Source of the DNA: Macrostomum lignano
Taxonomy: Eukaryota
Direction of reading: 5' to 3'
DNA length: 64,000 bases
Assembly (NCBI GenBank): GCA_002269645.1
Contig: NIVC01001925.1
Location: forward strand, 157,225 to 221,224
Below the pieces are notes generated by a model. The model did not search any database. It saw nothing but the letters and a program-made list of their open reading frames with translations, and was not told the DNA's origin. Position 1 is the stretch's first letter. Each line of letters starts with the position of its first letter. Shown in pieces: positions 10,745 through 51,800 of this stretch. Made by a program: the position numbers and the translations under genes.

Positions 10745-12590
10745 TCAATTGTGCTGACTAGCGAACTCAAGAAACAATTCGTACAGAAAGATATTCTCTT
10801 CTAGGAGAAGCTCCCCAGCGCGAAGAGCGGTGCGGCTTCGCTTCAGGGTCTCCAGCTGCTCCCGTTCCGGCGGCGTCAGCAGCTGAGCAGCCTGAGCTCG
10901 TTGCTCGCTTAGCTCGGCCGATGCGTCCGAGTTCCCGGCCGAATCGGCGGCCGAGATTTGAGCATCGAGATTTTTTAAAAGCTCTTTGACGCGCTGCCTC
11001 TTGTCCAGCAGGCGCCGGTTGGTGGCCACCTCGGCAAGGCGGCGGGTGAGCAGCCGGTCCTGAGCAGTGAGGGGCGGTTGAGAAGGGACGACTCTTTGTG
11101 CCGAATTGAGTAGCTTAAAGTGAGATTCTTTGAGGGACTGAGTAGCTTGAAGTGAGATTCATTGAGAGATTGAGTAGCTTGAAGTGAGATTCATTGAGGG
11201 ATTGAGTAGCTTGAAGTGAGATTCATTGAGATTGAGTAGCTTGAAGTGAGATTCATTGAGATTGAGTAGCTTGAAGTGAGATTCATTGAGATTGAGTAGC
11301 TTAAAGTGAGATTCATTGAGTGATTGAGCAGCTTAAAGTGAGAATCTGAGAGACTGAGTAGCTTAAAGTGAGATTCTTTGAGAGACTGAGTAGCTTGAAG
11401 TGAGATTCATTGAGATTGAGTAGCTTAAAGTGAGATTTATTGAGGGATTGAGTAGCTTGAAGTGAGATTCATTGAGATTGAGTAGCTTAAAGTGAGATTT
11501 ATTGAGGGATTGAGTAGCTTGAAGTGAGATTCATTGAGGGATTGAGTAGCTTAAAGTGAGATTTATTGAGGTATTGAGTAGCTTGAAGTGAGATTCATTG
11601 AGATTGAGTAGCTTAAAGTGAGATTTATTGAGGGATTGAGTAGCTTGAAGTGGGATTCATTCAGAGACTGAGTAGCTTAAAGTAAGAATCTTTGAGATTG
11701 AGTAGCTTAAAGTGAGAATCTTTGAGAGACTGAGTAGCTTAAAGTGAGATTCTTTAAGAGACTGAGTAGCTTAAAGTGAGATTCTTTAAGAGACTGAGCA
11801 GCTTAAAGTGAGATTCTGTGAGTGATTGAGCAGCTTAAAGTGAGATTCTGTGAGTGATTGAGCAGCTTAAAGTGAAATTCTTTGAGGGACTGAGTAGCTT
11901 AAAGTGAGATTCTTTGATACATTGAATAACTTAAGACGATTTTAAGTATTTCGTCTTGGCCTAGGTGACATCATACAAGCCCGTTTTACCTGATAAGCGT
12001 GCATGTTGAGCAGCAGTTTCCTGGTTGTCTGCTCTAAATTAACGTGAAACAAATAGTAGGCGGTGTTGGGCCGGGGGTTCATGAAGTCGGCGGCCCGGCT
12101 GAGCTCGGCGCAGTGGACGAAGCCGTCAACCAGCAGGCGGTAGAGCAGCTCCTTGCAGTCGCGGCCGCCGATCAGGACGTGCGACTCCAGCTCCGCCTGG
12201 GTGAGATTCGGCTCCTCGGACAGCGCATTGAACACTCGGACGGCCTTGTCGCCGAGGCGTTGGCGAATCACCGCGGCTACGGACTGGCGAGTGAGGCTGA
12301 AAATGGCGCGCCTGAACAGAATGCGGAACTGGCCGCCCGCTGCGCCCGACTGCCGCTCGATGAAGCCGTCTTCTGCCAGGCTGGACAGGTGCTGGTCCAG
12401 CTGGGCGGGGAGGCAGGTGAAAATGTTGATAGATAATAGATAAAAGACAGAAAGACAGACAGCCAGACAGGCAGATACTAAGAAAGACAGACAGCCAGAC
12501 AGACAGACAGAAGTCAGTCAGACAGACAGACAGACAGACAGACGGACAGACAGTCAGTCAGACAGACAGACAGACAGAAGTTAGTCAGTC

Positions 12591-12631
<41 letters not shown>

Positions 12632-15600
12632 GGCAGGCAGACAGACAGACCAACAGACAGGCAGACAGACAGACAGACCAACAGACAGGCAGACAGACAG
12701 ACAGACAGACAGACAGGCAGGCAGGCAGACAGACAGACCAACAGACAGGCACACAAACATTCTCACCCCAGATCTGGCATCGCCGGCAGCGGAGGCGGCC
12801 AACTGGGCCACAATGTCGGCATGTGCCAACACCTCGGACTCGGCGGACTGCGCGTGACCCAGCCGGACCCTCTCGTCCACAATGTCCAGCATGGCGGCAA
12901 GCACGCGGCTCGCCTGGGCGCCGAGAACGGACGCCGCGGCCCTGGTGAGGATCGAATCGCGCCAACGGAATCGGAGCTGCTGCGCGTTGGCCGAGAATTC
13001 CTGCGCTGCCTCCTCAGGACGACGGGCGTCGGCAACTGATGTGGTCTCGGCGGCGACTCGGGGGCGCTTGGCAGGCGGTTCCTGTTGTGGGGGCCGGGAT
13101 TTGCACCGGGACTGTTACTGGATTCTCACCTGGCATCTCTCTCTCCTTTGGCATTTCTCTCACCTGTCATCTTTCTCTCACCTGGCCTCTCTCTCATTTG
13201 GCATCTCTCTCTCACCTGGCCTCTCTCTCACTTGGCATCTCTCTTACTTGGCATCTCTCTTACTTGGCATCTCTCTCTCTAGTCTCTTACCTGGCATCCC
13301 TTTTTCACCTTGAATCTCATTCCCATTGGCCATCGATACATACATCAATGTTTTCCATCTTTTTCCCCTTTGGCATCCCACTGTCAACAATCCAATCCTA
13401 CAGGGCCAACAAAAACAGTTTTTTTAAATTGATTTTCCGCACACACCAGCGACTCGTTGGACAGTTTAACAGCCGGCCCCAGCGACTCTCGAATATGTCG
13501 AAGAGCGGCCTCTCGCTCAGCCCGACTCAACGGGGCGAACGGCTTTTCAACGCGATAAATCTTGCTGCTGCCAATGACGTCATCATCTTCGAACTCGTCG
13601 TCGTCTTCGAGACGGCCGCCGCTGCCACATCCGCTGTTGTCAGCAACTGGCAGCGGGGGGACAACGGAGCCGCGGCGTTGAATAAATCGCAGCTCCAACA
13701 GGCTGGCGAAGGCGTTCAATGCGCGCAGTCCGGGATCCACGGCGGCTGGTGCCGCTGCGGCGCTAGAGGAAGCTTCATCCTCTTCGGCAAGTCGCTTAGC
13801 AACGGTTGCTAGGCAGGCTAGGAGGCCCAGCCGGCCAGAGTACAGCAGCTCCTCGATTACCAGCTCGGCAGCGTGGCCCAGCTGAGTTCGAGTCAGGCAG
13901 AGAAAAGCTGGAGCTCGATTCAGCACTCGAACTTGCGCCCAGTTGATCGAATATTCAATGGCTGAGTCTTTGCGTCGACTCAAAATTAACAGGTCGTGTG
14001 TGAGCAGCAGAGTCAGGCACTGTTGCACCTGGTTAAATATTAGTTTGAGTGGATTGAGGCTTTTTTTATTAGAGGCAGGGGGGTTGTGTGCATCCTGGCG
14101 CACTTTAAGCGACATAGGCACACTTGCTGCCCATTGCTGCCCATTCCGCCGACTCCCCTGAGCAGGCACACAAGCGCGCGGATACGTACGCAGGCACACA
14201 CTCACACAGGAGTGTACAGCAGCCCTAACTTTATATTATTGTTACGTACACTTCACTGCGCCTTGGGGGGTTGGCTTTCAAGGCTGTTAATTGCACAAGC
14301 AGAGCCAAGCCGAGATTCCAATTCAGCCCCAAATTAATGTGGCTGCACTTGGAATCGAGCCTGGGTTGCTGGCACACCAGAGCAGCTGCGCTACCACTGG
14401 GCTACGGCCTCCCTAGATTGAGGCTAACCTAACGATTAGTATATACCTGTATGATAAATTACCACTGCAACCAAAATTTCCCATATCCATATTCATAGCT
14501 AATTAATTTCCTATTACTTGCCATTACTTTATTATCATTCTCTACATAGTGCCCAATGTGGGACTATATTTCACTATAATATAATAAGGAAATATAGAAT
14601 AATAGCAATAGCTTAACCTATCACTAATTAATTGTCTCATTTATTAATTGTGCAAGAAATATGGATGGGACTGCACTGCATTCATCTTGATTTTAGCCAT
14701 CACCAATCACAATGTGTATATAGCATAAAAATCTGTTGCTTGAAACTGGCTACATTTGTTTATTTCCATTGTCTTGTCCCTTTCACCACCTATAAAATCA
14801 AGGGCTATAATAGATCTGGTAGTCTTAGCTATTAAATGGCTAATATTATTAGACATAGGAATTGTGTTTCTATAAACATCCATATCTATATATTCTACCT
14901 TAAAGATTAGTTAAGAATAAAAAAGTTTGTTATACTTGTTTGACACTTTATAATTATAATGACCTTATATGCTAAAAATATAAGAACCATTTTTGTAACT
15001 TTTTTAAGTGTTTAAAAAATTGGTTTTTATAAAGAATGACATTATATATTTTTTCATATTAACATCAAAAGATCCTAATAAGATAGGCCCTACAAATATA
15101 AGATAACAAAAGATATTGGCATCCCAATCAAACCTAGCTAGAATCTCTAAATATATATTTTAAAAAATTCTCTCTATGAAATAGTATTTTTCACTTTCTT
15201 CTAATTTATATTTGCTTTTTATTTTATTCAACTGCATTTCAAAGTTAGGCCTACCCATTTGCAAAAAAACTAGTTTTTATTGCAATCTGCCTTTTGATTA
15301 TGATTGCTAGCATTGGCATTATTAAATAATGCCAATGCTAGCAATGGCAAGTCATGGGATTCTTGTTGATAAATCTTATTGAAATTTATAATCAAAATGA
15401 TATATATGGTTATAAAAGAATAATTTTTAACTTTTAGAAATCATATAAATAGATATTTCAATATGAAATTGTCTTGATTGAAACAACATTTCAATTTTCT
15501 AAGACTTTCTAGCCCCTAGGCATACTTTAAAAAGCTCAGTTTAGCTTAATAGTGCATTAAAAATAGGCCTAACCATAATAAAAATATTTAAAAAGCTTAT

Positions 15601-15937
15601 TCATTTGATTATGACAATGTACAAATTTATAAATTAATATATAAAATTCAAAATACTGGCTTACCATTTGTAAAACTTGATTATTTGTGCTCATAGTTTC
15701 AAAAGCAAGAGATGGGCTACTTTTTTCAAAGTATTTTAAAAGTCTTAAAGATGATGAATGTGCAAGATTTTCTGCTGGAAAAAATGAGACTTTTTCACTT
15801 GGTAGCCTAAACTGCTGCATGATCATTTGTAGTGGTGATTTGCTATTTTTGCTAATGTAGAGAAAGACTGCAGCAGTTTCAGGGCCAAGGTGGACCCTTA
15901 AAAACGAGGTAATTTGATCAACAGCACTAACTGCCAT
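10745..15937 (-). CDS. POLR3C: RNA polymerase III subunit RPC3/RPC62; exons 15937-15791, 14028-13447, 13111-12767, 12400-11990, 11059-10745; 599 aa
   Basis: Winged-helix RPC3 motifs: LRVHLGPETAAV, VQQCLTLLLTHDLL, AELVIEELLYSGRL, FSANAQQLRFRWRD, IRQRLGDKAVRVF, CKELLYRLL, YYLFHVNLE, LLTPPEREQLETLKR. All joins are phase 0. The exon 1 donor is atypical, so that junction is less certain. Confidence 0.93.
11107..11925. repeat. 30-32-bp minisatellite (TGAGTAGCTTRAAGTGAGATTCATTGAG..), about 26 copies, POLR3C intron 4
   Basis: Tandem units fill almost the whole intron. Confidence 0.96.
12445..12750. repeat. (GACA)n/(GGCA)n microsatellite, POLR3C intron 3
   Basis: Direct inspection. Confidence 0.97.
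13106..13320. repeat. 16-18-bp degenerate minisatellite (CTCACCTGGCATCTCT), POLR3C intron 2
   Basis: About 9-11 degenerate units; on the transcribed strand they read AGAGATGCCAGGTGAG. Confidence 0.9.
14062..14415 (-). mobile_element. Full-length tRNA-derived SINE (354 bp) in POLR3C intron 1, sense to the host gene
   Basis: Minus strand: A-box TAGCCCAGTGG, B-box-like GGCTCGATTCC, degenerate cloverleaf head, TAATAAAAAAA tail. Perfect 10-bp TSD GATTGAGGCT at 14052-14061 and 14416-14425. Confidence 0.88.
15303..15345. other. Perfect 21-bp inverted repeat with 1-nt spacer (43-bp palindrome) in POLR3C intron 1
   Basis: ATTGCTAGCATTGGCATTATT-A-AATAATGCCAATGCTAGCAAT. Confidence 0.95.
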
Positions 15938-17755
15938 AGTTATTTTTTGCTATCCTAAATCATAATTCTACACCAATTTATCTATGGTACTTTTTAAATT
16001 TCCAATAAGTCTAAGTCCTACATATTTATTCGATGCATTCTTAAATTCTAACCTAACATTTTATACATTTGTATTATATTATGACTAATGCTATATGCAA
16101 ATTTAATAAACGAGCAATTTCTTATTAAAAACGATTACATGACCACCTCCATGAGGACTCGGACTCATTTTTTACTTGACGGAACTAACATTCGGCTTAG
16201 CAACATGCCAAGCCGTTTTGTTGGTTTTTAGTCTTAATTATTTTGCTGAAGTTTTTAAGCCAATAAATCCGAGTCACTTTCTAAAGTTATTTACATTTTT
16301 TACTTTGCGTTTGAGATAAACTTTGTTTAAACGGACTATTGTTTACAAAGGATGCAGGCAACAACGTCTAAAATTTAACATGAAAAATTTGTTCACTTTG
16401 TTCACACTAGCTAACTGTGCAGAGCGGCTGTTCTCGAAGCAAATAATGAATTCGAAAAATAACTAAAGGTAAGAAAAAATAAATATTAAAATTCATTTTT
16501 GGGAAATCTCTGGTTGGAATCGCTATGGCGTTTACTATTACATGTTTCTAGCACAGCATTTGAGTACAATGTGGAATCCCATACTTAAGAAACGCTAACT
16601 CCTTAAAAAAATTTTATTCCTGGAGCCCAAAATTAGTAGTAGGTCTTAATTACTACATCTCCTAAGTTTGACTTTCCAAGTTTCTATTAGGTTTTTTTTC
16701 TGCGACTTCATGCAACCATGTTCATATAATTTCACATGGCTATTAAAACATTCCAGGTTGCCATAAACTCCAGAATTCATAAGATCGATTTGATATGGAT
16801 AATCATCCAATGTATGTTTATCTTTCTTTAACAACGAATATTTATTAAAAATTATGTAACCTTTGCTAGCCGTTACCTGCCTTTTATTTATTCATCTTGT
16901 TGTCTCCGTACTACGAGCTATCTTATTTTCTCTCATAGTCATAGGAACTGCTTCAATGCAAAACAAAATCATAATTAAAATTCGACTTATACAATTCAAA
17001 TTGATCCGAAGAAGTTTCAGTTGCAGTTCTGATTATTTTATTAACTGAACCAGCCACTGGTACCTTAACTATTTATTATTTAATGTCGTGTTACAAACTA
17101 TACAAAACACCTGCTAGATGCACATTAATCACAACCCCCAAAGATCTGTCTAAATTGCGCTATCTACTAACAAGCAATCAATTTTTCTATGCTGTTGGTT
17201 TGGTTGATTTTCCATGATAAATATTACTCGCCTGTACAGAATATTAATTGAAGTATTAATTCATTCACTTTAATTTTTTATTGCAACAACAAATACGAAT
17301 TTATCTTTTTATTTTGACATATTTTGACAAAAAGTCCAGTTTAAGTAGCTTAAATTGTTTACAATGATTCTCACATATTAAATTGATAACCGAAAGAGGG
17401 AAGTGAACAGAAATGCGTGTGCAGATGCAGATGCAGCTCAGGTTTGAGGAGCAGTGATCAGCTAGAACTGGAAGGACTGCATAAAATACCTTTAAAAAGC
17501 ACTACGTGGAATATTTTGCCCTATATTTCGAGCAGCACCCTGCTGGAGCGGAACGGCAGTTTCTACCCCTCAGTGGAGCCCAGCTGGTCGCAGCAAGCAG
17601 CAGCAGCAGCAGCCGGCAGAGACCTGGATTATTCTCCGTACGCCAGGGCCGCTCCGGCGGCCGCCGCTCGTGTGGATGAATTCGACCTGATCCGGGCGAG
17701 TCACGTGCTCACAAGGCCGCCACCGGCTCCGGGTGGGCAGCACCAGCACCGCGGC

Positions 17756-26700: not shown

Positions 26701-29700
26701 CTGAGAATCGCCCTCCCTGACACCTGAGAATCGCCCTTACCTGACACCTGACAATCGCCCTTACCTGACACCTGAGAATCGCCCTCCCTGACACCTGAGA
26801 ATCGCCCTTACCTGACACCTGACAATCGCCCTTACCTGACACCTGACAATCGCCCTTCCCTGACACCTGAGAATCGCCCCTCCTGACACCTGACAATCGC
26901 CCTTACCTGACAGCTGACAATCGCCCTTCCCTGACACCTGAGAATCGCCCTCCCTGACACCTGACAATCGCGCTCCCTGACACCTGAGAATCGCCCTCCC
27001 TGACACCTGAGAATCGCCCTCCCTGACACCTGAGAATCGCCCTCCCTGACACCTAACAATCGCCCTCCCTGACACCTGAGAATCGCCCTCCCTGACACCT
27101 GACAATCGCGCTCCCTGACACTTGAGAGTCGCTCTTTCACCGTCTTCCGTCACCTGAGATCCCATTGAAGAACGGAAGCTCTGCTCCCCGGTCCCGCAGG
27201 AGGACGAGTTCGTGCTCGAAGCGGTCGGACTCGGCAAGCGAATCGACAAAGTTCGTATCGGACACGACGGGAAGAACGCCGGCAGCGGTTGGTACCTGGA
27301 CAAGGTGACCGTCTGGCGGGAGGACCAGCCTGATAATAAATTCGAGTTCATCTGCGATAGGTCAGTTTAATCTGCTTGGTTTTATACAAATGTATATTCT
27401 TTACATTCATTTCAAACTAATCACTACACAATCACGTTGGATAATCCCAATCAATAACCTGTGCTGAGTTTTACTCAGTTTAATAAACCGCATTATTTTG
27501 CTACCTTTTCTACAGGTGGCTGGATTCCAAGGAAGATGACGGCTGCATTGAACGGGACCTCACAGCTTCTGGAACCCTGCTGGACAGTGAGTTGCCGAAG
27601 ACAAAAACTGCTTTCAAACTGATATCAAGAATCAGATCGCAATGCTAGAAACTGAGCACAACTCCAGAATCTCTGAGCACAACAATAGAATCTCTGAGCA
27701 CAAATCTACAATCTCTGAGCACAACAATAGAGTTTCTGAGCACAACCCGAGAATCTCTGAGCACAACCCCAGAATCTCTGAGCGCAACAATAGAATCTCT
27801 GAGCACAACAATAGAATCTCTGAGCACAACAATAGAATATCTGAGCACAACCCCAGAATCTCTGAGCACAACCCCAGAATCTCTGAGAGCAACAATAGAA
27901 CCTCTGAGCACAAATCTACAATCTCTGAGCACAACCCGAGAATCTCTGAGCACAACCCCAGAATCTCTGAGCGCAACAATAGAATCTCTGAGCACAACAA
28001 TAGAATCTCTGAGCGCAACAATAGAATCTCTGAGCACAACCCCAGAATCTCTGAGCACAACCCCAGAATCTCTGAGCACAACCCCAGAATCTCTGAGCGC
28101 AACAATAGAATCTCTGAGCACAACCCGAGAATCTCTGAGCACAACAATAGAATCTCTGAGCACAACCCCAGAATCTCTGAGCGCAACAATATAATCTCTG
28201 AGCACAACCCGAGAATCTCTGAGCACAACAATAGAATCTCTGAGCACAACCCTAGAATCTCTGAGCACAACCCGAGAATCTCTGAGCACAACAATAGAAT
28301 CTCTGAGCACAACCCCAGAATCTCTGAGCACAACCCTAGAATCTCTGAGCACAACCCTAGATTCTCTGAGCACAACCTTATAGAATCTCTGTGCTTATTC
28401 CAAAGAATTCCTAATCACAATTCCTAGAAACTATGATAGAAATCTACAGTCAGCTCTAACTCTCACATTCACTCCACAGAGCTCACCTACAACGTGTCGG
28501 TGAAAACAGGCGACGTGTCAGGCGCCGGCACCGACGCGAACGTCTTTCTCAACATCTTCGGCGACAAAGGCGAAACTGGCGAACGCCAGCTGAAAGCCTC
28601 CGAGGCAGCTTTCAATAAATTCGAGCGGAACCGCACCGACCTGTTTCGGATTGAGAGTCCCGATATTGGAAAGGTGGGCGGCTGTTTTGGCTGGCGTTGA
28701 ACACTTTGTTGGAAGCTCAATTGTCTTATAGTCTACATGTATTTGTACGCCTGAAACACTACTAGCTTGTACAAAGCCACACCGCCACTCAACTTCAAAG
28801 TGACGTCACCACTCAGCACCAAAGCCACACCACATCTCAGCACCAAAGCCACACCACCACTCAACAACAATGCCACACCACCACTCAGCAACAATGCCAC
28901 ACCACCACTCAGCACCAAAGCCACGTCACCAATCAGCACCAAAGCCACGTCACCACTCAGCACCAAAGCCACGTCACCACTCAGCACTAAAGCCACGTCA
29001 CCACTCAGCACCAAAGCCACGTCACCACTCAGCACCAAAGCCACGTCACCACTCAGCACTAAAGCCACACCACCACTCAGCACTAAAGCCACGTCACCAC
29101 TCAGCATCAAAGCCACACCACCACTCAGCATCAAAGCCACACCACCACTCAGCATCAAAGCCACACCACCACTCAGCACCAAAATGACGCCACCACTCAG
29201 CATCCAAGCTACACCTCCACTAAGCGCCGAAGATGCACCTTTAGCAGAGTCAACTATTGCAATATTTGGCGGACGATAACAAAAACACGAGGGCTCAAAA
29301 GCCAGAATCAGTCGATATATATATTTTAATATTAGGCATGCACAAAGTATGTGCGTACATTACAATCGATAAATCAAAAGACAACTTGAGCGTGCCCCCA
29401 ACCCCCCCCAGCGCAGGCCAACCCCAAAACCGCAAATGCAAACTCTCAATATCAAGTCATCACATCCCTTCGCACTTAAGTATGAAAGTAAGATTAACAA
29501 AAATTAACACTATTAGTAATAATTAAAAAAAATATTGAAGCGAGCAACACAACTAAGGTACTAAAATCGAGTTCATCAAGAACAGTTACTTCAGCTGTAA
29601 GTCAGTCGCTCAGGTGCAGCGCACTTCCTCATCGAACGGCGAAGCTGCGGTATGGCGTCAGGCTCTGCCGCAGCCTCAGTAGCAACGCCGTCAGCAAAAA

Positions 29701-35700: not shown

Positions 35701-38700
35701 GGTGTACTTCCCCTGCCACCAGTGGCTGTCCACATCGAGGGATGGAGGTCACATCTCGCGCGACCTGCTGGCGGTGGACAAGTCGCACATGGGCAAAGAC
35801 GTGCACGAGAAGCTGAAACTGGAGAAGAAAGGTGAGCAACTGCTTTTAACCTCGAACTGTACTTTGGTTTCAATTCATCTTCACTAAATATTTTTTGACT
35901 ATTGAAAACCTACAGGATTATTCACGTCACAGGTTTCGATCTGCTTTTTCTGCCTTTGAAACTCTTTAATAAATATTTTCCTAATCCTTTTCAGTCAATT
36001 GCAAAAAGGATTATAGATCATTAAATTTGTAACGCTTCTATATTTTCAGACACGACTGAAGCAGGTGAATTGTTGATGAGTGCTTGATGACTAAAAAGGA
36101 TTGATAAATAGATAGAAGCCCACCTAGTTTAAGCAAGAGAATCTTCGCACTTTAATAGTCCTGAACGTCATTAATTTTTGTTAAATCGCTCCCCAGCGGA
36201 GAGCCAACCGGGTCGATAAGTCAGCCAGAATATTCGCACGCTGTTCGCACTGTTGATTTCGGCAGAATTGCTGCACAGTTTTGTAAACATATTTTCCAAT
36301 CCGAACGTTTAGCTGTGCTACTTATCGGCATGAAAGTCATTGGAAATTCCTGCATGTAAAACTCCTACGTTTGTACGGAACAACCTTCTAATACGCTCTT
36401 GAGTTTGCTTGTCATTGATATCGGAGTACTTTAATTTAGCTACTTGTATTTAACTAAAATTTAGTAGACTAAGCAAAAACCAAAGGTGAGATCAAAGGCA
36501 AAGTCTTCAGGTTCCAGTATGAACCGGACAATTTCATTTTTACTTTTGACATTTGGCATCTGTTTGGCAGACTTTCCTAGCTGTAGTTCTTGGGGTCTAG
36601 GGGCAGTAAGTAACGGGGTTCGATTCCGTGCATAGCCACATCGATTCGTGCTCGTGCATGCGCACAAAAATTGGCTATTGAGAGCAGCCTTCAAGAGACA
36701 GAGCGTACGAGAGGCATGCGATCAAGAAATTCAGGGCCGCTGTACACCCTGTGTGTGCTCAAGAGTCAGCGGAATGGACATGACATGCCACCTTGATTAG
36801 CGACAACGCCCAAAGCCCCCTGCGAGCTAACGAAAGAAAGCCAGTGGCATTTAACTGGGATTAGTTTGACAATCTTGGACTGCGACATTCTGTATCTAAG
36901 GATTCTTTGCTCTCACTATGCCGCCGCTCAGAAGTATCTTTATAATTTATCACCCGATTACCACCGCAGCCGCGTCCGAAACCTACCACGTGAAAATTTA
37001 CACTGGCGATGTTTATGGAGCCGGCACTGATGCCAACTGCCACATCGTTCTGTTCGGCGACTCGGGCGACTCAGGCGTGGTGCCGCTGCAGCGGAGTAAG
37101 ACCTATTCGGACAAATTCGAGCGAGGCCACTGCGACGAGTTCGAAATCGAACTGGTGGACATCGGCGAACTGAAGAAAATCAAGCTGGGGCACGACAACT
37201 CCAATCCCAGACCAGACTGGTATGTAGAAAAGGTTGAGATCGACTGTCCGAAGTTGGGCACCTCCTGGCTGTTCAATGTCGGCGAGTGGATTGGCAAGAG
37301 CAAAGGCGACGGCCAGTTGGAGAAGACGCTCTACCCGCAGCAGGGCGCCACCAGGATTTACGCCAACCGTGAGTCCAAGAGTGCATAGAAGCGGACTGGC
37401 CTCAGTGCCTCAGTGTAGCGCAATCTGAAATGGTCTTGGTCTCAGCTCTCACGGTTCGCAACTGTATTTCTACCGTAATTCAGAGCTGCTGCTACCGTAC
37501 CATATCAGTTACGGGGGTTGGACAAGTATCCCCTCTAGGGTGTGATTCCGCGTCCGTCCGCCTCAACGTTTATTTCGTAGAAGTTAGGGCCACTGTACAC
37601 ACTGTGTGAGCGCGTTTCGAACTCTCAATGGAGTCAAACTAATCCAGCCTATATATAGGTTGTGCTCAACTATGCTTTGGTAAAGACTAAAGGCTTTGAT
37701 AAGTCACTGGAGACAGTGACGTACGAGGTCAGAGATTCAATAAAATAACCCTACCCATCAATCAACAACAGGTGTGCCATACGAGATCACGACCTACACG
37801 TCGGACAAGAGCAGCGCCGGCACCAGCGCCAATGTGTTCATCCAGATCTACGGCAGGGAGACTCAGACGGAGCAGAAGCTGCTCTGTTCCAAGACCGATC
37901 GGTCGGGAAAATTCAAACGAGGCAGCGTAGACAAATTTGTGCTGGAGGTGAGCGCCGGGGATTGACCGCTCTGGCTGGACTTTTTAAGGGATTTTTTATT
38001 TTATTTTATTTGCCATAGAAAAGGGATCAGGCTCAATCAGATTTGTAGCTTCGGTTTGTAGCTGCAACTGGGAAAATCCTGTCGATCGGCTAGGAAACAT
38101 GACTTAATAGATAGTGTGTATAACAGGTAACAACCTGTCTAAAATGTAGTACTTTGTCCAACAAGTAACACCTAACATGTATCTAGCAGTCTCTTTTCTC
38201 ATCTATCAGGTGACGCACCTCTAGCACCGAAGATCCTGTCTAAGAAGCAGTCATCTGTCTAACACCTTTCTATTTGGGCTCAAAAAGTTTATTTATGGCA
38301 ATTATATTCATATCATAGTTCACGCACCGCCCGATTGTTCCCAATTTTTCCTATCCAGCTTGAAGACGTGGACGACCCGATTGAAAAGATTCGCATCGGC
38401 CACGACGACGAGGGCCTTCGATCTGGCTGGCACCTGGACAAGGTGGAGATAAGAAAGTTCATCGAGGGCAAGGTAGGTACAAGTAGTTTTTTTAAGCAAA
38501 GCTATTTATCTCTATAGAAATGTATTTTTAGCACTGTAGGTGGTCGAAGTTCCAACCCTGCATTTCTACAACAGCGACCCTATCACAACAAAGTTAAATT
38601 GAGCTCTAGCTTGAGAGGGATGACGATGACTCTGGTTGACTTGCAGACACTGAGCTAACAACTGGCGCTATTGTACCTCATCTGGTACTTCTGGTACAAC

Positions 38701-41700: not shown

Positions 41701-43303
41701 CGCCTCTTGTTTTAGTGTCATTTCAAATCAGTGCCGAAGTAGGTAAATTGACGCACGAGGTTTTCCAGCGGGACAATGTGATACTATTTTACTTGCGCCC
41801 CGCTAGTCCACGGTACCCGCATACCGGTAGCAACCAGATGGATTCGTTACTTTTAGTTGCAAAAACAGCAAACCGTAAAAAATTTAATTAGGACACTACA
41901 CTCAATTTTATTAGAAATGAGATTCATTTACCGGCCTCCAGCAGAATCTCGAAAAAAAAGTTTTTTTGACTTGGTTAAGGCCTAAAAAATGCGTAACTTT
42001 TTATCCAACGAAATTTGTAACAGCAATGTAACAAAAACGTGCGGGAATAACAAACAGCGCATATTTGAAAACTCTTCGGGTCGCTCTTAAAAGTCTCTTT
42101 CTTATGCAAGCAGAAGTTGCATTTGTGAGGTCGTAAATTTGCGACGCTTCAGAGACACGTCAGAGTACTTTACGGAGTACGATCGATGGACTTGTAGTAT
42201 TTTTCCTAGTTAGTGACTGACGTGCGCATTCCCTCCTGATGCACTCAGACAGAGTATTTGCTCAAATTTTGTGTAAAAAGGTTCATTTTGTTTTGATACC
42301 CAGAAGCTCCAATCTACATGTGTGTTTTCAACATACTCGTACGCTTCTCGCTTCCCCAAACATTCCGCAGAGCTCAATGTAATCAAGTATGAAGTTGAAG
42401 TTGAAACTGGCGACGAATTCGGATCCGGCACAAACGCCGATGTGTCTTTAAACATTTTTGGCGAATTCGGCGAACTGGGCGTCACACCGCTGAAGATGAA
42501 AGGCCGAGATCTGTTCGAGCGCAACCAGGTGGACAAGTTTACGATTGAAAGCCGCGACTTGGGTAAGCTTTGAGGCGTCGAACCTCTGCCTCACCTGAAA
42601 TCCCTCACGGCCTTACCTGACATCTCTCACAGCCTTACCTGACATCCCTCACAGCCTTACGTGACATCCCTCACAGCCTTACCTGACATCCCTCAGTCTC
42701 AACTGACATCCCTTATAGTCTCACTTGACATCCCTCACAGCCTCACCTGACATCCCTCCCAGCCTCACCTGACATCCCTCTCAGCCTCACCTGACATCCC
42801 TCCCAGCCTCACCTGACATCCCTCACAGTCTCACCTGACATCCCCACAGTCTCATCTGACATCCCTCCCAGCCTCACCTGACATCCCCACAGTCTCACCT
42901 GACATGCCAAATCTAGCGTCCATCACAGCCTCATCTAAAGCCCTTTTCAGCATCACTTGACATCCTTCTGAACATTATGAACTTCAGTTGACATCTCTCA
43001 TCTCACAGTCTTGTGGTTGTGACTCCCACATGTACATGCCTGACGATCTTCTGTCACAAAATTTAAATGTATACGTGTACTAGTCTTATACCCCTTATCG
43101 CTAACCTCAATTCTCCAGGTGAGCTCAAGAAGATCCGCATCGAGCACAATGACTCCGGCTTTCGGTCGGACTGGCTGCTAGCCAAGGTGACAGTGAAGGA
43201 CTCGAGCAGCGGTAAAGTTTGGGTCTTCAACTGCAACCAGTGGCTGTCAAAGAAGAAAGGCGACAAGCAGATATTCAAGGAGCTGTATCCGACTCAGGGC
43301 TGA
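17756..43303 (+). CDS. LOXHD1: Lipoxygenase homology domain-containing protein 1 ortholog, 17 PLAT repeats, at least about 2,690 aa, 22 coding exons; start codon uncertain (ORF open from 17417)
   Basis: Exons ...17876, 18675-18897, 19410-19659, 20051-20758, 21051-21563, 22437-22563, 24324-24716, 25223-25377, 27200-27360, 27516-27586, 28480-28673, 33839-34031, 34314-35831, 36970-37368, 37772-37947, 38359-38472, 38770-39439, 39584-40075, 40232-40392, 40534-41590, 42371-42562, 43119-43303. All joins are GT-AG and in frame. PLAT signature Y.V...TG...GAGTDANV...G...HD..G...GW.LD.V...C..WL repeated 17 times, in an order colinear with vertebrate LOXHD1 (e.g. LSPV...YCPMTGIEQTF; VPSQGKQYNF; FLMENSRDRRVF). 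Confidence 0.93.
19240..19335 (+). mobile_element. Degenerate SINE core fragment related to the 14062-14415 element
   Basis: GCTGTACACCATGTGCTAGTGTGCC and TCAGGGGTCAGCAGAACGGGCA align with GCTGTACACTCCTGTGTGAGTGTGTGCC and TCAGGGGAGTCGGCGGAATGGGCA. Confidence 0.55.
21854..22298 (+). mobile_element. hAT/Charlie-like non-autonomous remnant with internal (CTCTC)n expansion
   Basis: Starts CAGGGGTCGGCAAACTCCGGCCCGCGG..CACATGCGGCCC, a typical hAT MITE 5' end. Degenerate right end GGCCCGCGG...TGTCTGACCCTTG; no TSD found. Confidence 0.55.
22035..22182. repeat. (CTCTC)n pure pyrimidine microsatellite, LOXHD1 intron 5
   Basis: Direct inspection. Confidence 0.97.
23011..24048 (-). mobile_element. Internally deleted mariner-family element with about 184-bp inverted repeats (23025-23208 / 23865-24048)
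   Basis: Left end GAGGGGTGTCCCAAAAGTTCC is mariner-like. Minus-strand remnants encode the N-terminal HTH (KISDHLFSIHGENSLKKTAIYEWIERFRDG) and C-terminus (AIDGMLSKWQRCIQLNGDYVEK); catalytic core missing. Confidence 0.88.
24850..25165. repeat. 14-bp minisatellite (ATAAATCGGCCTTC), LOXHD1 intron 7
   Basis: About 20 degenerate tandem units. Confidence 0.93.
25418..26048. repeat. 24-25-bp minisatellite (GTTGGCGCCGATTCCATTAGCTACA), LOXHD1 intron 8, 5' part
   Basis: About 26 tandem units. Confidence 0.96.
26377..27125. repeat. 22-24-bp minisatellite (CCTGACACCTGAGAATCGCCCTC), LOXHD1 intron 8, 3' part
   Basis: About 32 tandem units. Confidence 0.96.
27652..28390. repeat. 21-bp minisatellite (TCTCTGAGCACAACAATAGAA / ..AACCCCAGAA), LOXHD1 intron 10
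   Basis: About 35 units; the length is a multiple of 3, which explains the spurious long ORFs. Confidence 0.97.
28775..29225. repeat. 24-bp minisatellite (CAGCACCAAAGCCACGTCACCACT), LOXHD1 intron 11
   Basis: About 18 units directly upstream of the LTR element. Confidence 0.96.
29591..32250 (-). CDS. Retrotransposon pol: reverse transcriptase (FVDD), RNase H, integrase (HHCC, DDE); open from about 32250, no own ATG
   Basis: KLDLSQAYSQL, YTRLPFGVAPAVGIFQ, CFVDDLLV, CDASPYGIGAV, HQGHQG...CTEC, SDNGP, SNGQAERAV. Confidence 0.95.
32236..33528 (-). CDS. Retrotransposon gag (two CCHC knuckles) plus aspartic protease
   Basis: ATG 33528 immediately after the PBS; CYRCLSQRHLAAKC, CYACSKTGHIAAAC; protease EVDTGAS. 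Confidence 0.95.
   Translation of the reverse strand: MSLIGSIGPFEEGTETWQQYQERLEQFFTANEISNEKRRAVLLSICGRDTYQLISNLLSPALPKDTTYDAICAKLKEHFDPTPPEIVRRFRFYSRSRQAGESVAEFLAELRKLARDCNFGVGLSSMLRDRLVLGISDDSIQRRLFTEKELSLDTALSLAQAHESAAQGNLLVAKGAGSDMVHALHHSARREAASGPPAKRCYRCLSQRHLAAKCPFINSKCYACSKTGHIAAACKAAPPAQRDERSAGPQRASNRRVDSTVQELQAEEADEEAFSLHVMAAAVGGKIPPIKTTIDIDGTPVCMEVDTGASVSLISAKTYNEVLRGRPRLERVNTQLRTYSGELVPVLGQLRVRAQTEIASKVLPLLVIDGAGSNLVGRDWLAELPLDWRDIKQVQQHPSGQPGLKSLLDKYAEVFEPGLGRYSGPRFGCS
34045..34210 (+). mobile_element. Degenerate tRNA-derived SINE fragment, LOXHD1 intron 12
   Basis: B-box GGTTCGATTCC (34112-34122) followed by GCACATAAATTTGGGG, similar to GCCACATTAATTTGGGG of the 14062-14415 SINE. 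Confidence 0.55.
36560..36840 (+). mobile_element. tRNA-derived SINE relative, LOXHD1 intron 13
   Basis: B-box GGTTCGATTCC (36617-36627), AGCCACAT, CAGCCTT, core AGGGCCGCTGTACACCCTGTGTG and GAGTCAGCGGAATGGACA in the same order as in the POLR3C SINE. Confidence 0.7.
37395..37660 (+). mobile_element. tRNA-derived SINE relative, LOXHD1 intron 14
   Basis: Degenerate A/B boxes (TGGCCTCAGTG; GGTTCGCAA) and core AGTTAGGGCCACTGTACACACTGTGTGAG (37582-37610), nearly identical to the POLR3C SINE core. Confidence 0.65.
42585..42905. repeat. 21-22-bp minisatellite (TCACAGCCTCACCTGACATCCC), LOXHD1 intron 21
   Basis: About 15 units. Confidence 0.94.
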
Positions 43304-45248
43304 GGCTGTGTAGATCTCTCGAGATGCTATATTAAAAAGCTTTGCGCACCTGTTATTTAATCGAATTTATAACATTTTCACACCGTTATATGATATTCTT
43401 ATGCCAATTTTGCTTGGTTCAAACTCTCGGTGTAAATGTAGAGTTCATGCTTCAACCAAATTTAATATTAAAAAGCTAAAAAGCTGACAAGAAAAAATTA
43501 TTTTATTTCTTGGAAATATTGCAGCTAATTTAAACCACACAATTAATACTTCTGGGATACCTAATAATTTAAAGATCCAAGTCAAGTCAAAATTTGAAAT
43601 TGAGTTATTTTTTAAGCTTTAATATATCAAATTTTGCGATTTTCTGATCTGAAAGGTTATTTTGTTTTTATTGCGCTCCATGTATCAAAGTTTGTGCAGC
43701 AAGTGACCTTCTGTTTGCCTTAGCCACTATTATAGTCTTCTTTCTGCCTTAACTGAACGTGATTGTGCCTACACTGGACCACCTGGGAACTTATTGCACC
43801 ACTTCCATTAATTTTTAATTTATTATGTTTAATTTTGCCTTTATAAGATTTCAGAAGATCTATAATTTATTGTTTCATATTTATGATTGATTTCTATTTT
43901 CCTCTTTTTAAGGTTGAATTTTACCCGGCCTGGCTTTATAATCTGCTTGCAAGTTACTGTATGATATGATACACTCTGCTTATCTACATGTACTTATTCT
44001 GCTTCTGAGACTGCTTCTACATTAAACTGTGTAATAAATTAATTACTATACTAATATATGCGGTTCAACTAATTATGACCAACAATAGTGGCTTAGTAGA
44101 TTTTCTTAGTGGCTTTCGGTATTCGATCTGTGCTGGGCACACAAGTAAAGGCTTTTTCATAACATTATGCAAAATGAATAGTGGCTGTAAAAATCGTGGA
44201 AAGTAATTTAACTAAAAAAAGTTTGTTTAAAATAATAAAATGACGAGAATTCTTAGTAACAATCTGTTTTAACAAAAAGTAATTTGTATTAATTTTCAAA
44301 CGGTTATTGTTTTAAATTTTGTCAACAATTTTCCGGTTTGCTTTTTGTTTGATAATTGACGGGTAAATGTTTAAATATGTTTAAAATGTTTAAATATATT
44401 AAGCTGAAATATAGATCAGACTTGTGAAATATTGCTATAATAAATATTATCGAATTGAAATATTTATCAAGACTCATTCTCTGATTTTATTTCATTTCTT
44501 ATAAGTCTTGCATTCTCTGTTGATGTTTATGAACCTTTGAATTTCCCCTACTACGGTCTTATTTATAACTGTGTTTACAGGCCACTTCATCAATTTTTTT
44601 CGCCATAATTTCCTGTTAACTCTAACAATAACAATTGTCCCGGGAGCTCAGGCACTCCAGCCATTGTTGATTGATCGTTTCTTTGGTAACGAGATTTGCC
44701 TTGCCTTGTGGGTTCAAAATACTTCAGTTTTTCTGAACATTCTGTAGTTGAAATCTGAATGCAGGCTTGGTTTTAAATTTCTGACTTTTGAGCCTAACGG
44801 CCCGGAAAGGGGCTTCAGTCATTTGATAGTTGTTTAAAGACAATTTTTTCTGAATCAGTTTCCTGACACGAACTTAATGAAAAAATAGCCTTTTTTAAAA
44901 AGCCGAATTAAAAGCAAGAAAAGCTACAATGAGTTACAAAAGCCTCATGATACTCAGGAGAGGCTGAGCAGAATTCAATGCAAAGTTAAAATTGAGGCGC
45001 TCACACAGAATAATGGCTTGTATGAAGAATCAAAAATGTCTGTGATGTATTGCATCATCTGGAAGATTTAAATTGCACGACAAGTAAGCTAGCGTTTAAA
45101 ATTGCCAAAATTACAATTACGTTAGAATATAACAAAATTTACACAAAATTTAACTGAAAATTGCAAAATTTCAGCAAACAAGCATGTCCTTCAGAAGGAA
45201 GGATGTCCTTCAGGTTCATTCACGGACACGGTTCGATTTTCCCCGTCG

Positions 45249-47477
<2,229 letters not shown>

Positions 47478-47967
47478 CGCTGACAAACCAGCTGAGACAA
47501 AGGAGATTTGGGGAATATCATTCCATGCAAAAGTTAGAGATCCCCTCTTATTTGGCTTTAAATAGCCCGTCTGGGCGGCAATCCTCTTGTGCGCGAAAGC
47601 AGAGAGGGGGAGAGAGTACAGCCGGAGGAAATGACAAAAGGAGGGAGTCGACAGCCCGCAGCTGAGCTCACCTATAGGAATTTTCTTTACCTAAAATGGA
47701 CGCGGCATGTTTATGACGGGCGGGGTGGCCTGAATCACTCAAAATTTGCCCCGGTGTGAGTGGGGTGCGGCTTGAGTTTGCTGGGGATTTGGGCTGAGTA
47801 ATGGAATATTTAATCTGGACTCGGGGGGAGCGGAACTGCCAGCTGCTGCAGTCTGCAAATCTGATTTACTATGATGACAGCCATCTGTCAGCACACCTGT
47901 CTGATACCTGCCTGTGTCTGCTTGCCTTCCTTCTGCCATCCATTCTGTTAATGTCTTTGATAATGCG

Positions 47968-48409
<442 letters not shown>

Positions 48410-48879
48410 TTTATCGGCATTCTGTCAGCAATAGATCAGCATGCGCACTCGGTTGGTAAAAATAGCCTCTGACTTGAGCTCCACCCCTGAGCTGTACTAT
48501 TGTTTAAGTCTAGCTGACTTTTATTCTGCTTTACATGGCAGAAAAGCTTTTTAAACACTCTCAATCAGACCATGCAGCTACCGAGCTGTCTCAAAAGCTT
48601 CTGCAAAATTTGTTTTTCTTCTCTCAGCAAGTTGCGAACTGAATTGAAACTGCTGGCACGGAATCTGCGAGCTGTGAGAGGCACTTTATATTTGTTTTCG
48701 TTCGGGGGATTCGTGCCTCTGGCAGCTTAGCGACCGATGGAAAGAATTTGTTGCGCGGTGGGCAGCTGCGTGAATGCGTGTGAGTCTGCAGCAGCTCATG
48801 CAGGATGCCTGGCCTGTCCTGAGAGAGCGTCCTGAGCATAGGGAGTCACAACTGGCTGCTTGAGCAAAGACTGGGACTG

Positions 48880-51800
48880 CACTGAGACAGACACTGGGAC
48901 AGACACTGGGACAGACACTGAGACAGACACTGGGACAGACACTGAGACAGACACTGAGACAGACACTGGACAGACACTGAGACAGACACTGGGACAGACA
49001 CTGGGACAGACACTGAGACTGACACTGAGACAGACACTGAGACAGACACTGAGACAGACACTGGGACAGACACTGAGACTGACACTGAGACAGACACTGA
49101 GACAGACACTGAGACAGACACTGGGACAGACACTGAGACAGACACTGGGACAGACACTGAGACAGACACTGGGACAGACACTGAGACAGACACTGGGACA
49201 GACACTGAGACAGACACTGAGACAGACACTGAGACAGACACTGAGACAGACACTGGGACAGACACTGAGACAGACACTGGGACAGACACTGAGACTGACA
49301 CTGAGACAGACACTGAGACAGACACTGAGACAGACACTGGGACAGACACTGAGACTGACACTGAGACTGACACTGAGACAGACACTGAGACAGACACTGG
49401 GACAGACACTGGGACAGACACTGAGACAGACACTGAGACAGACACTGAGACAGACACTGAGACAGACACTGGACAGACACTGAGACAGACACTGAGACTG
49501 ACACTGAGACAGACACTGAGACAGACACTGGACAGACACTGGGACAGACACTGAGACAGACACTGGACAGACACTGGGACAGACACTGAGACAGACACTG
49601 AGACAGACACTGAGACAGACACTGGGACAGACACTGGGACAGACACTAAGACAGACACTGAGACAGACACTGGGACAGACACTGGGACAGACACTGGGAC
49701 AGACACTGAGACAGACACTGGGACAGACACTGAGACAGACACTGGGACAGACACTGAGACAGACACTGGGACAGACACTGAGACAGACACTGGGACAGAC
49801 ACTGAGACAGACACTGGACAGACACTGAGACAGACACTGGGACAGACACTGAGACAGACACTGAGACAGACACTGAGACAGACACTGGGACAGACACTGA
49901 GACAGACACTGACAGACACTGAGACAGACACTGGGACAGACACTGGGACAGACACTGGACAGACACTGAGACAGACACTGGGACAGACACTGGGACAGAC
50001 ACTGAGACAGACACTGAGACAGACACTGGACAGACACTGGGACAGACACTGAGACAGACACTGACAGACACTGACAGACACTGAGACAGACACTGGGACA
50101 GACACTGAGACAGACACTGGGACAGACACTGAGACTGACACTGAGACAGACACTGAGACAGACACTGAGACAGACACTGGGACAGACACTGAGACAGACA
50201 CTGAGACAGACACTGAGACTGACACTGAGACAGACACTGAGACAGACACTGAGACAGACACTGGGACAGACACTGAGACTGACACTGAGACAGACACTGA
50301 GACAGACACTGAGACAGACACTGAGACAGACACTGAGACAGACACTGGACAGACACTGAGACAGACACTGAGACAGACACTGAGACAGACACTGAGACAG
50401 ACACTGGGACAGACACTGAGACTGACACTGAGACAGACACTGAGACAGACACTGAGACAGACACTGGGACAGACACTGGGACAGACACTGAGACAGACAC
50501 TGAGACAGACACTGAGACAGACACTGAGACAGACACTGAGACAGACACTGAGACAGACACTGAGACAGACACTGACAGACACTGAGACAGACACTGGACA
50601 GACACTGGGACAGACACTGAGACAGACACTGAGACAGACACTGAGACAGACACTGGGACAGACACTGGGACAGACACTGGGACAGACACTGGGACAGACA
50701 CTGAGACAGACACTAAGACAGACACTGAGACAGACACTGAGACAGACACTGAGACAGACACTGGGACAGACACTAAGACAGACACTGAGACAGACACTGG
50801 GACAGACACTGGGACAGACACTGGGACAGACACTGAGACAGACACTGAGACAGACACTGGGACAGACACTGGGACAGACACTGGGACAGACACTGGGACA
50901 GACACTGAGACAGACACTGGGACAGACACTGGGACAGACACTGGGACAGACACTGGACAGACACTGGGACAGACACTGGGACAGACACTGAGACAGACAC
51001 TGAGACAGACACTGGGACAGACACTGAGACAGACACTGGACAGACACTGAGACAGACACTGGGACAGACACTGGACAGACACTGAGACAGACACTGAGAC
51101 AGACACTGGGACAGACACTGAGACAGACACTGAGACAGACACTGAGACAGACACTGGGACAGACACTGGACAGACACTGGACAGACACTGAGACAGACAC
51201 TGGGACAGACACTGGGACAGACACTGAGACAGACACTGAGACAGACACTGGGACAGACACTGGGACAGACACTGAGACAGACACTGACAGACACTGAGAC
51301 AGACACTGAGACAGACACTGGACAGACACTGAGACAGACACTGGGACAGACACTGAGACAGACACTGAGACAGACACTGAGACAGACACTGAGACAGACA
51401 CTGGGACAGACACTGAGACAGACACTGGACAGACACTGAGACTGACACTGAGACAGACACTGAGACAGACACTGAGACAGACACTGGGACAGACACTGAG
51501 ACTGACACTGAGACAGACACTGAGACAGACACTGAGACAGACACTGAGACAGACACTGAGACAGACACTGGGACAGACACTGAGACTGACACTGAGACAG
51601 ACACTGAGACAGACACTGAGACAGACACTGGGACAGACACTGAGACTGACACTGAGACAGACACTGAGACAGACACTGAGACAGACACTGGGACAGACAC
51701 TGAGACAGACACTGGGACAGACACTGAGACAGACACTGAGACAGACACTGGACAGACACTGGGACAGACACTGGGACAGACACTGAGACTGACACTGAGA

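What the first reader, a model, noticed from the sequence alone, without database searches (positions are those of the whole stretch)
13982..14425. A Pol III-type SINE inside intron 1 of a Pol III subunit gene: possible autoregulatory circuit
A full-length tRNA-derived SINE (A-box, B-box-like, polyA, perfect 10-bp TSD) ends 33 nt before the POLR3C exon 2 acceptor, in sense orientation. It has no T4 terminator, so a Pol III transcript would cross the 3' splice site and stop at the first TTTT (13985-13982) inside exon 2. In mammals a Pol III-transcribed MIR in Polr3e intron 1 (antisense) interferes with host Pol II transcription. An independent insertion in another Pol III subunit gene could give convergent feedback through TFIIIC/Pol III occupancy or splice interference (inference). 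The clean TSD suggests a recent insertion, so it may be neutral.
Basis: partly seen in the sequence, partly recalled or inferred. Interest (0 to 1): 0.7.

Follow-up and report, generated by a model that had tools for sequence, protein, structure and literature searches.

The report
Ordinary SINE in flatworm POLR3C intron

Summary
The window is Macrostomum lignano DNA. On the minus strand a 354-nt SINE (14415-14062) has a perfect A box, a 10/11 B box, an A-rich tail and 10-bp target-site duplications. It lies in the sense orientation, 33 nt upstream of the exon 2 acceptor of a POLR3C (RPC3) homologue. There is no T4 run before 13985-13982 in exon 2.

It belongs to a repeated family. Five M. lignano gene models carry peptides derived from it, and three degenerate relatives lie in other introns of the same window. 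The same insertion is present in assembly Mlig_3_7.

The autoregulation idea has no support here and two points against it:
- In the Polr3e study the MIR is antisense, conserved across mammals and Pol III-occupied, and a sense-oriented MIR had no measurable effect in the reporter.
- Published SINE content (0.39% of 764 Mb) predicts several SINE copies in Pol III subunit genes by chance. The same intron also tolerates a MITE in the other assembly.

Pol III occupancy, transcripts and effects on the host gene cannot be tested with these tools.

Verdict: a real SINE, most likely neutral. Low interest.

The parts
14416..14425 (-). 5' target-site duplication AGCCTCAATC
   Evidence: Exact 10-mer, one of only two copies in the window. 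It directly abuts the 5' end of the element.
14062..14415 (-). SINE, 354 nt: promoter head, roughly 270-nt body, A-rich tail
   Evidence: The same element with the same flanks is at L001 8480-8832 in Mlig_3_7, with 0 mismatches and a 1-nt indel in a C run. Peptides derived from it occur in five M. lignano gene models.
14341..14409 (-). 69-nt tRNA-like unit (GGCCGTA...TGCAGCC)
   Evidence: The ends can pair at 6 of 7 positions (read directly from the sequence). The Rfam tRNA model and ARAGORN do not recognise it. Its fold energy is no better than that of shuffles (z = -0.42).
14394..14404 (-). A box TAGCCCAGTGG
   Evidence: 11/11 to TRGCNNAGTGG.
14351..14361 (-). B box GGCTCGATTCC
   Evidence: 10/11 to GGTTCGANNCC, with C at the position of tRNA T54. 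Copy P0002 encodes RLDS at this point, which also requires that C, so the C is probably a family feature.
14212..14226 (-). Body core motif AGGGCTGCTGTACAC, shared with three degenerate relatives in the window
   Evidence: AGGRCYRCTGTACA occurs four times in the window, against about 0.004 expected by my estimate.
14062..14070 (-). Tail AATAAAAAA, containing an AATAAA hexamer (14070-14065) in the sense orientation
14052..14061 (-). 3' target-site duplication AGCCTCAATC
14029..14051 (-). Last 23 nt of intron 1 after the duplication, with a CTAAT branch-point-like motif (14043-14039) and the acceptor AG (14030-14029)
   Evidence: The branch-point assignment is an inference.
14440..14445 (-). TATATA in the flank, at -30 to -25 from the first base of the element
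   Evidence: It lies in DNA of 27% G+C, so it may well be there by chance. Any role in TFIIIB binding is an inference.
13982..13985 (-). First TTTT downstream in the sense direction, inside exon 2. A read-through Pol III RNA ending here would be about 434 nt.
   Evidence: The transcript itself is an inference.
15791..15937 (-). POLR3C exon 1 (ATG at 15937, 49 codons, phase 0; donor GT at 15790-15789)
   Evidence: Exon 2 alone aligns from human RPC3 residue 51 (37.8 bits). Adding exon 1 extends the alignment to residue 10 (50.5 bits). Exon 1 alone is not significant.
13402..14028 (-). POLR3C exon 2 (3' end approximate; the donor is either CCT|GTAGGA at 13402/13401 or ACT|GT at 13417/13416)
10748..12892 (-). 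POLR3C exons 3 (part), 4 and 5: 12892-12764, 12400-11990, 11062-10748
   Evidence: tblastn of NCBI protein BOX15_Mlig006743g2 (P0001), 98-100% identity.

Best explanation
This is one retrotransposed copy of a Macrostomum lignano SINE with a tRNA-type (A box / B box) internal Pol III promoter.

How it got there (inferred from established SINE biology): a source copy was transcribed by Pol III. A LINE enzyme reverse-transcribed that RNA at a nick in the AT-rich first intron of POLR3C, which produced the 9-10-bp target-site duplication.

What it does now (inferred): it is carried as a passenger. Pol II transcribes it as part of the pre-mRNA and it is removed with intron 1. Its effect on POLR3C is nil or negligible.

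Its promoter is intact in sequence, so if chromatin allowed, Pol III could start near the first base of the element and run to the T4 at 13985-13982, giving an RNA of about 434 nt. That is what any A-tailed SINE copy would do, and it does not imply regulation.
For: Shown:
- Full SINE anatomy with exact target-site duplications.
- Family membership. Five different M. lignano gene models contain peptides 74-90% identical to translations of the element, in both orientations. Three degenerate relatives share a body core, and one also shares a B box and the 3' tail. They lie in introns of the LOXHD1-like and calmodulin-like genes of the same window.
- The same insertion is present in the independent assembly Mlig_3_7, so it is not an assembly artefact.
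- Intron 1 tolerates other insertions. Mlig_3_7 has a 296-bp MITE there, with a 14-bp terminal inverted repeat and an 8-bp target-site duplication. The window has the empty site.

Base rates:
- SINEs make up 0.39% of the 764-Mb assembly and the mean gene length is 7.5-9.4 kb. That is about 8,400 element equivalents, or one per roughly 90 kb.
- For 17 Pol III subunit genes this gives about 1.4 copies expected in a non-redundant set. It gives 3-4 in an assembly with two to three paralogous copies. This is my arithmetic and assumes uniform density.
- In human cells only 1,301 of about 578,000 MIRs were expression-positive (PMC5381342).
- A sense-oriented MIR had no measurable effect in the Polr3e study's reporter.
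Against: - No expression, occupancy or population data could be examined, so neutrality is the default reading and has not been demonstrated.
- The promoter boxes are unusually intact.
- A TATA-like hexamer sits at -30 to -25.
- The insertion is only 33 nt from a 3' splice site, and the element carries AATAAA in the sense orientation. Some cis effect on RNA processing is therefore possible.
- The Polr3e paper also shows Pol II accumulating at some sense-oriented Pol III units in human cells.
Confidence: 0.85

Rival explanations
1. The SINE is an active Pol III unit whose occupancy (a TFIIIC/TFIIIB roadblock, or co-directional Pol III transcription across the 3' splice site) lowers POLR3C output in proportion to Pol III activity. 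This would be a negative feedback convergent with the mammalian Polr3e-MIR arrangement.
For: - Intact A and B boxes with normal spacing, and no terminator before exon 2.
- A TATA-like hexamer at -30.
- The element is in the first intron of a Pol III subunit gene, as in Polr3e.
- Pol II accumulation was seen at some sense-oriented Pol III units in human cells, and the tRNA-gene roadblock in yeast is orientation-independent, as discussed in PMC5358760.
Against: - The orientation is sense. In the only direct test, a sense MIR had no measurable effect, and the authors favour head-on collision as the mechanism.
- There is no evidence of conservation. The exact target-site duplication suggests, though only weakly, a young insertion.
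- The family is scattered through other introns, and chance co-occurrence is expected.
- Most SINE copies are not Pol III-occupied.
- M. lignano has three subgenome copies of most loci (PMC10733133), which would dilute any single-copy effect.
Confidence: 0.04
2. A cis effect on RNA processing that does not involve Pol III. The insertion 33 nt from the acceptor, with an A-rich tract and an AATAAA hexamer in sense, weakens use of the intron 1 3' splice site. Alternatively it causes some intronic polyadenylation or exonisation, making this POLR3C copy slightly hypomorphic.
For: - The geometry and the AATAAA hexamer at 14070-14065.
- SINE-derived segments appear inside five M. lignano gene models, which could reflect exonisation.
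- Redundancy from three subgenomes would relax selection against such an effect.
Against: - The 33 nt retained between the element and the exon still contain a branch-point-like CTAAT and the AG.
- The exon 1 and exon 2 reading frames are intact in the window.
- The insertion is shared by two sequence versions.
- The SINE-containing gene models may simply be annotation errors.
- No RNA data were available.
Confidence: 0.08
3. It is not a mobile element at all: a chance resemblance, a tRNA pseudogene, or an assembly artefact.
For: The tRNA covariance model and ARAGORN do not recognise the head. Its fold is no better than that of shuffles.
Against: - Exact target-site duplications abut both ends.
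- The A+B box pair is unique in 128 kb of searched strand.
- Homologous segments occur in five other M. lignano genes and three other introns.
- The element is present in a second assembly.
Confidence: 0.02

Closest known systems
tRNA-promoter SINEs (SINE2 / type-2 Pol III promoter SINEs), as defined in SINEBase (PMC3531059); for example MIR, B2, and mollusc and cnidarian SINE2 families
   Same: Short (354 nt) and non-coding. Internal A and B boxes at tRNA-like spacing. A unique body, an A-rich tail, target-site duplications, and multiple copies in the genome.
   Different: The head is too diverged for tRNA models to recognise it. The B box carries C where tRNAs have T54. The partner LINE, the copy number and the family name are unknown here. 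So far it has been seen only in M. lignano.
Polr3e intron 1 MIR (Yeganeh et al. 2017, PMC5358760)
   Same: A SINE with a Pol III promoter in the first intron of a gene for a Pol III subunit.
   Different: [quoted passage not shown] Deleting it raises Polr3e expression. Here the element is in sense orientation and probably young, nothing is known about occupancy, and the host subunit is a different one (RPC3 rather than RPC5).
SINE superfamilies with conserved central domains (CORE, V, Deu, Ceph, Meta; PMC4824008)
   Same: The body contains a short core (AGGRCYRCTGTACA and flanking bases) shared by copies that otherwise differ. This is the behaviour of a central domain.
   Different: The sharing is shown only within M. 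lignano.
Schistosome SM-alpha-type SINE-like elements (from my own knowledge, not tested)
   Same: Flatworm short retroposons with Pol III promoter boxes.
   Different: SM-alpha carries a hammerhead ribozyme. No CTGATGA...GAAA hammerhead core is visible in this element on direct reading of the sequence.

Membership tests
tRNA-promoter SINE (SINE2) | Internal A box TRGCNNAGTGG | tested here: met
   TAGCCCAGTGG at 14404-14394, 11/11.
tRNA-promoter SINE (SINE2) | Internal B box GGTTCGANNCC about 30-60 nt downstream of the A box | tested here: met
   GGCTCGATTCC at 14361-14351, 10/11, with a 32-nt gap. It is the only such pair in the window.
tRNA-promoter SINE (SINE2) | Head recognisably homologous to a tRNA (cloverleaf) | tested here: not met
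   ARAGORN finds nothing. Rfam RF00005 gives no hit even at E <= 10. The minimum-free-energy fold is not a cloverleaf (z = -0.42). Only the ends of the 69-nt unit pair, at 6 of 7 positions. Degenerate heads are common in SINEs, so this lowers the claim 'derived from an identifiable tRNA'. It does not lower the claim 'type-2 promoter SINE'.
tRNA-promoter SINE (SINE2) | Short, non-coding, with an A-rich or LINE-like 3' tail and target-site duplications | tested here: met
   354 nt, longest open frame 56 aa. Tail AATAAAAAA(A). Exact 10-bp duplication.
tRNA-promoter SINE (SINE2) | Many dispersed copies in the genome | tested here: inconclusive
   At least five other copies are inferred from gene models, plus three degenerate relatives in the window. 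The genome itself could not be searched, so copy number and consensus are unknown.
tRNA-promoter SINE (SINE2) | 3' end shared with a partner LINE | not testable with these tools
   No M. lignano LINE library was available. The relic at 36816-36835 shares the tail motif CCCCCTGC..CTAA..AAA.
Polr3e-MIR-type transcriptional interference | Pol III unit antisense to the host gene (head-on collision) | tested here: not met
   The element and POLR3C are both on the minus strand. A sense MIR had no measurable effect in the reporter.
Polr3e-MIR-type transcriptional interference | High Pol III occupancy of the element | not testable with these tools
   No ChIP or RNA data for M. lignano were accessible.
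Polr3e-MIR-type transcriptional interference | Arrangement conserved across species | tested here: inconclusive
   The insertion is present in the window and in Mlig_3_7. Locally these differ by about 0.25% in substitutions and by a MITE. No other species or strain could be examined.
Polr3e-MIR-type transcriptional interference | Located in the first intron of a Pol III subunit gene | tested here: met
   Intron 1 spans 15790-14029 of an RPC3 homologue.
POLR3C / RPC3 / RPC62 (host gene) | Homology to RPC3 winged-helix domains over the N- and C-terminal halves | tested here: met
   Human RPC3 (PDB 2xub) at E = 2.3e-12 over residues 10-170. Pfam WHD_POLR3C and RPC3_helical on the C-terminal half.
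Central-domain SINE superfamilies (CORE, V, Deu, Ceph, Meta) | Sequence similarity of the body to a superfamily central domain | not testable with these tools
   The consensus sequences are printed only in figures of PMC4824008. Repbase and Dfam were not available.

The most novel reading that the evidence does not exclude
The element is a Pol III-occupied unit that throttles POLR3C in proportion to Pol III or TFIIIC activity. This would be a second, independently evolved case of a Pol III subunit gene regulated by a SINE in its first intron. It would work in the sense orientation, and so by a roadblock or by interference at the splice site rather than by head-on collision.
Probability: 0.03. 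Interest if true: 0.65.

Novelty: new member of a known kind. Interest (0 to 1): 0.12.

Why it matters
As it stands it matters little. It is one copy of a lineage-restricted flatworm SINE in an intron.

It has two modest practical uses:
- It documents the anatomy of a SINE family in M. lignano, a transgenic flatworm model whose SINEs (0.39% of the genome) are essentially undescribed in the papers I could search.
- It shows that the NCBI model of M. lignano POLR3C is N-terminally truncated.

If the feedback idea were true, it would be a convergent second example of Pol III sensing its own activity through an embedded SINE, in a model where reporter and deletion tests are feasible.

Tried and rejected
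- **tRNA and RNA-family scans.** ARAGORN and Rfam on the window and on 13900-14500 gave no tRNA or other credible family. The only hits were sub-threshold miRNA and U6 noise.
- **Protein search with exon 2.** It found nothing. The C-terminal half then identified the organism.
- **Exact-protein look-ups to obtain more M. lignano DNA.** The CHCH protein, P0002, P0003, the RIMBP-like ORF and two SINE-exon 2 ORFs were not on record. No genome-wide copy set, consensus or age estimate could therefore be made.
- **Metagenome scans.** The first found nothing. The second hit only a bacterial M23-peptidase gene through a chance 24-mer. This was rejected as unrelated.
- **Literature.** No description of M. 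lignano SINE families was found. Only the 0.39% figure turned up.
- **Doubt about exon 1.** I considered that exon 1 might be spurious because it lies in a block of 27% G+C and is not significant alone. I kept it for three reasons: it adds 12.7 bits, it extends the human alignment exactly from residue 51 back to residue 10, and its phase and length fit.
- **Timing of the insertion.** I considered using the window-versus-L001 comparison to date it. Local divergence is too low for this: about 0.25%, so under one difference is expected in 354 nt.
- **Orientation of the SINE-related copies.** All four in the window are sense to their host genes. With n = 4 (p about 0.06-0.12) I draw no conclusion.

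Full report
**Organism and host gene**

The window is Macrostomum lignano DNA. The C-terminal half of the gene's product matches NCBI protein BOX15_Mlig006743g2 at 99%. That protein's locus in assembly Mlig_3_7 (NIVC01000632.1, fetched as L001) is collinear with window 22586-431 at 95-99.7% identity.

The gene lies on the minus strand and has five exons:
- Exon 1 is 15937-15791: ATG at 15937, 49 codons, phase 0, donor GT at 15790-15789.
- Exon 2 starts at 14028, after the acceptor AG at 14030-14029.
- Exons 3 to 5 map at 12892-12764, 12400-11990 and 11062-10748.

The evidence that this is POLR3C is as follows:
- Exons 1 and 2 together match human RPC3 (PDB 2xub) at E = 2.3e-12 (50.5 bits), collinear over residues 10-170.
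- Exon 2 alone scores 37.8 bits and starts exactly at human residue 51.
- Exon 1 alone is not significant. Its length, phase and added score support it.
- Pfam WHD_POLR3C and RPC3_helical hit the C-terminal half.

So 'intron 1 of POLR3C' is right. Intron 1 is 1,762 nt, 15790-14029.

**The element**

On the minus strand a 354-nt element runs from 14415 to 14062. It is flanked by AGCCTCAATC at 14425-14416 and 14061-14052, the only two copies of that 10-mer in the window. Its features are:
- A perfect A box at 14404-14394.
- A B box with one mismatch at 14361-14351, 32 nt downstream. This is the only A+B box pair on either strand of the window.
- A 69-nt unit whose ends can pair.
- A body of about 270 nt.
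- The tail CTCTAATAAAAAAA.

The tail ends 33 nt before exon 2. In the sense direction the first T4 is at 13985-13982 and the next at 13906-13903.

Two qualifications apply. First, ARAGORN and the Rfam tRNA model do not recognise the head even at E <= 10, and its fold is unremarkable. 'tRNA-derived' thus rests on the promoter boxes. Second, an exact 10-bp duplication is only weak evidence of youth.

**It is a member of a repeated family**

A six-frame translation of the element hit three M. lignano gene models. A single-frame search of 1.84 billion representative proteins hit two more. All five are M. lignano and none is from another species. The matches are 74-90% identical and occur in both orientations. 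One copy (P0004) matches through to the first three bases of the element, so this copy looks complete at its 5' end.

Copy P0002 encodes RLDS across the B box. That requires the same C at the T54 position, so the C is probably a family feature rather than damage to this copy.

Within the window, three degenerate relatives share the body core AGGRCYRCTGTACA. That makes four occurrences against about 0.004 expected (my estimate):
- 36540-36850 (+). This one also has a canonical B box GGTTCGATTCC and the same tail motif.
- 37385-37640 (+).
- 45410-45330 (-).

All three lie in introns of the LOXHD1-like and calmodulin-like genes, in sense to their hosts.

**Comparison with Mlig_3_7**

The same insertion, with the same duplications, is at L001 8480-8832. 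It has no mismatches and one 1-nt difference in a C run.

Over window 16300-13300 the two versions differ by seven substitutions and a few indels. This is too little to date the insertion. The two may be the same locus in two assemblies, or paralogues from the three subgenomes described for this species (PMC10733133).

Mlig_3_7 carries a 296-bp MITE in the same intron, with a 14-bp perfect terminal inverted repeat and an 8-bp duplication TTAGAGAT. The window has the empty site at 15151-15144. Intron 1 therefore accepts transposon insertions without visible consequence.

**The proposed circuit**

The precedent is real. [quoted passage not shown]

The same paper reports that a sense-oriented MIR had no measurable effect in the intron reporter, and it favours head-on collision as the mechanism. 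It does note Pol II accumulation at a few sense-oriented Pol III units. Here the element is in sense, nothing is known of its occupancy, and conservation is untested.

Lack of an internal terminator is the normal state of A-tailed SINEs (established knowledge), so read-through into exon 2 is not a designed feature.

Base rates point the same way:
- SINEs are 0.39% of the 764-Mb assembly and genes average 7.5-9.4 kb. That gives about one element equivalent per 90 kb.
- This predicts roughly 1.4 copies in a non-redundant set of 17 Pol III subunit genes, and 3-4 in the redundant assembly. This is my arithmetic and assumes uniform density.
- In human cells only about 0.2% of MIRs were expression-positive.

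**What keeps the idea alive**

The boxes are intact. A TATATA hexamer happens to lie at -30 to -25 from the start of the element, although it sits in DNA of 27% G+C. The insertion is close to the 3' splice site and carries AATAAA in sense.

I therefore keep two minority readings: Pol III-dependent feedback (about 0.04) and a Pol III-independent effect on splicing or polyadenylation (about 0.08).

**Verdict**

This is a real SINE copy and a new member of a known kind. It most likely arrived by LINE-mediated retroposition and now sits as a neutral passenger that is spliced out with intron 1 (confidence 0.85). The autoregulatory reading cannot be excluded without occupancy and expression data. 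It is disfavoured by orientation, by base rate and by the absence of any sign of conservation.

Noticed in passing
window 14426-17400: A 3-kb AT-rich block (23-36% G+C) holds the POLR3C promoter region, exon 1 (GC3 0.37) and intron 1. Exons 2-5 have GC3 of 0.59-0.84. The compositional step falls exactly at the start of exon 2. Similar AT-rich stretches occur at 43000-45000.
   Followed up: partly
L001 7449-7744 (empty site at window 15144-15151): A 296-bp MITE in POLR3C intron 1, with a perfect 14-bp terminal inverted repeat (CATACATGCGCAAC) and an 8-bp target duplication TTAGAGAT. It is present in Mlig_3_7 and absent from the window.
   Followed up: partly
window 13660 (L001 about 9233): A C6 versus C5 homopolymer difference inside exon 2 frameshifts the Mlig_3_7 copy. 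This may be an assembly error or a real change. It probably explains why the NCBI model BOX15_Mlig006743g2 (283 aa) lacks the N-terminal half of POLR3C.
   Followed up: partly
window 36540-36850 (+), 37385-37640 (+), 45330-45410 (-): Three old, degenerate relatives of the SINE, in introns of the LOXHD1-like and calmodulin-like genes. All are in sense to their host, as is the POLR3C copy. Four of four in sense is too few to interpret.
   Followed up: partly
proteins P0002-P0006 (UniRef A0A1I8IQ49, A0A1I8FTS2, A0A1I8HHG8, A0A1I8GNL1; MetaClust UPI0007A2091B): Five M. lignano gene models contain SINE-derived peptide segments. These are either exonisations or, more likely, annotation artefacts of the repeat-rich genome.
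   Followed up: partly
window 55877-64000: A tandem satellite of 236/238-bp units with at least 31 copies, many 98-100% identical. It runs to the end of the window.
   Followed up: no
window 12430-12800; 46100-48415; 48800-52800: Long (AGAC)n-type microsatellite and 12-nt-period arrays. One lies inside POLR3C intron 3. The arrays at 46236-46687 and 47964-48415 are inverted relative to each other (452-nt arms, 92% complementary).
   Followed up: no
window 11105-11934 (POLR3C intron 4) and 27547-28455: A minisatellite of about 30 bp in intron 4, whose copy number differs from L001. A 21-bp repeat array of about 34 units that stays open in one frame (SEHNPRI...).
   Followed up: no
L002 2432-2455, L003 1746-1769: A 24-nt exact match to the SINE body inside a bacterial M23-peptidase-like gene from metagenomes. 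It is a chance match, not a SINE copy.
   Followed up: yes
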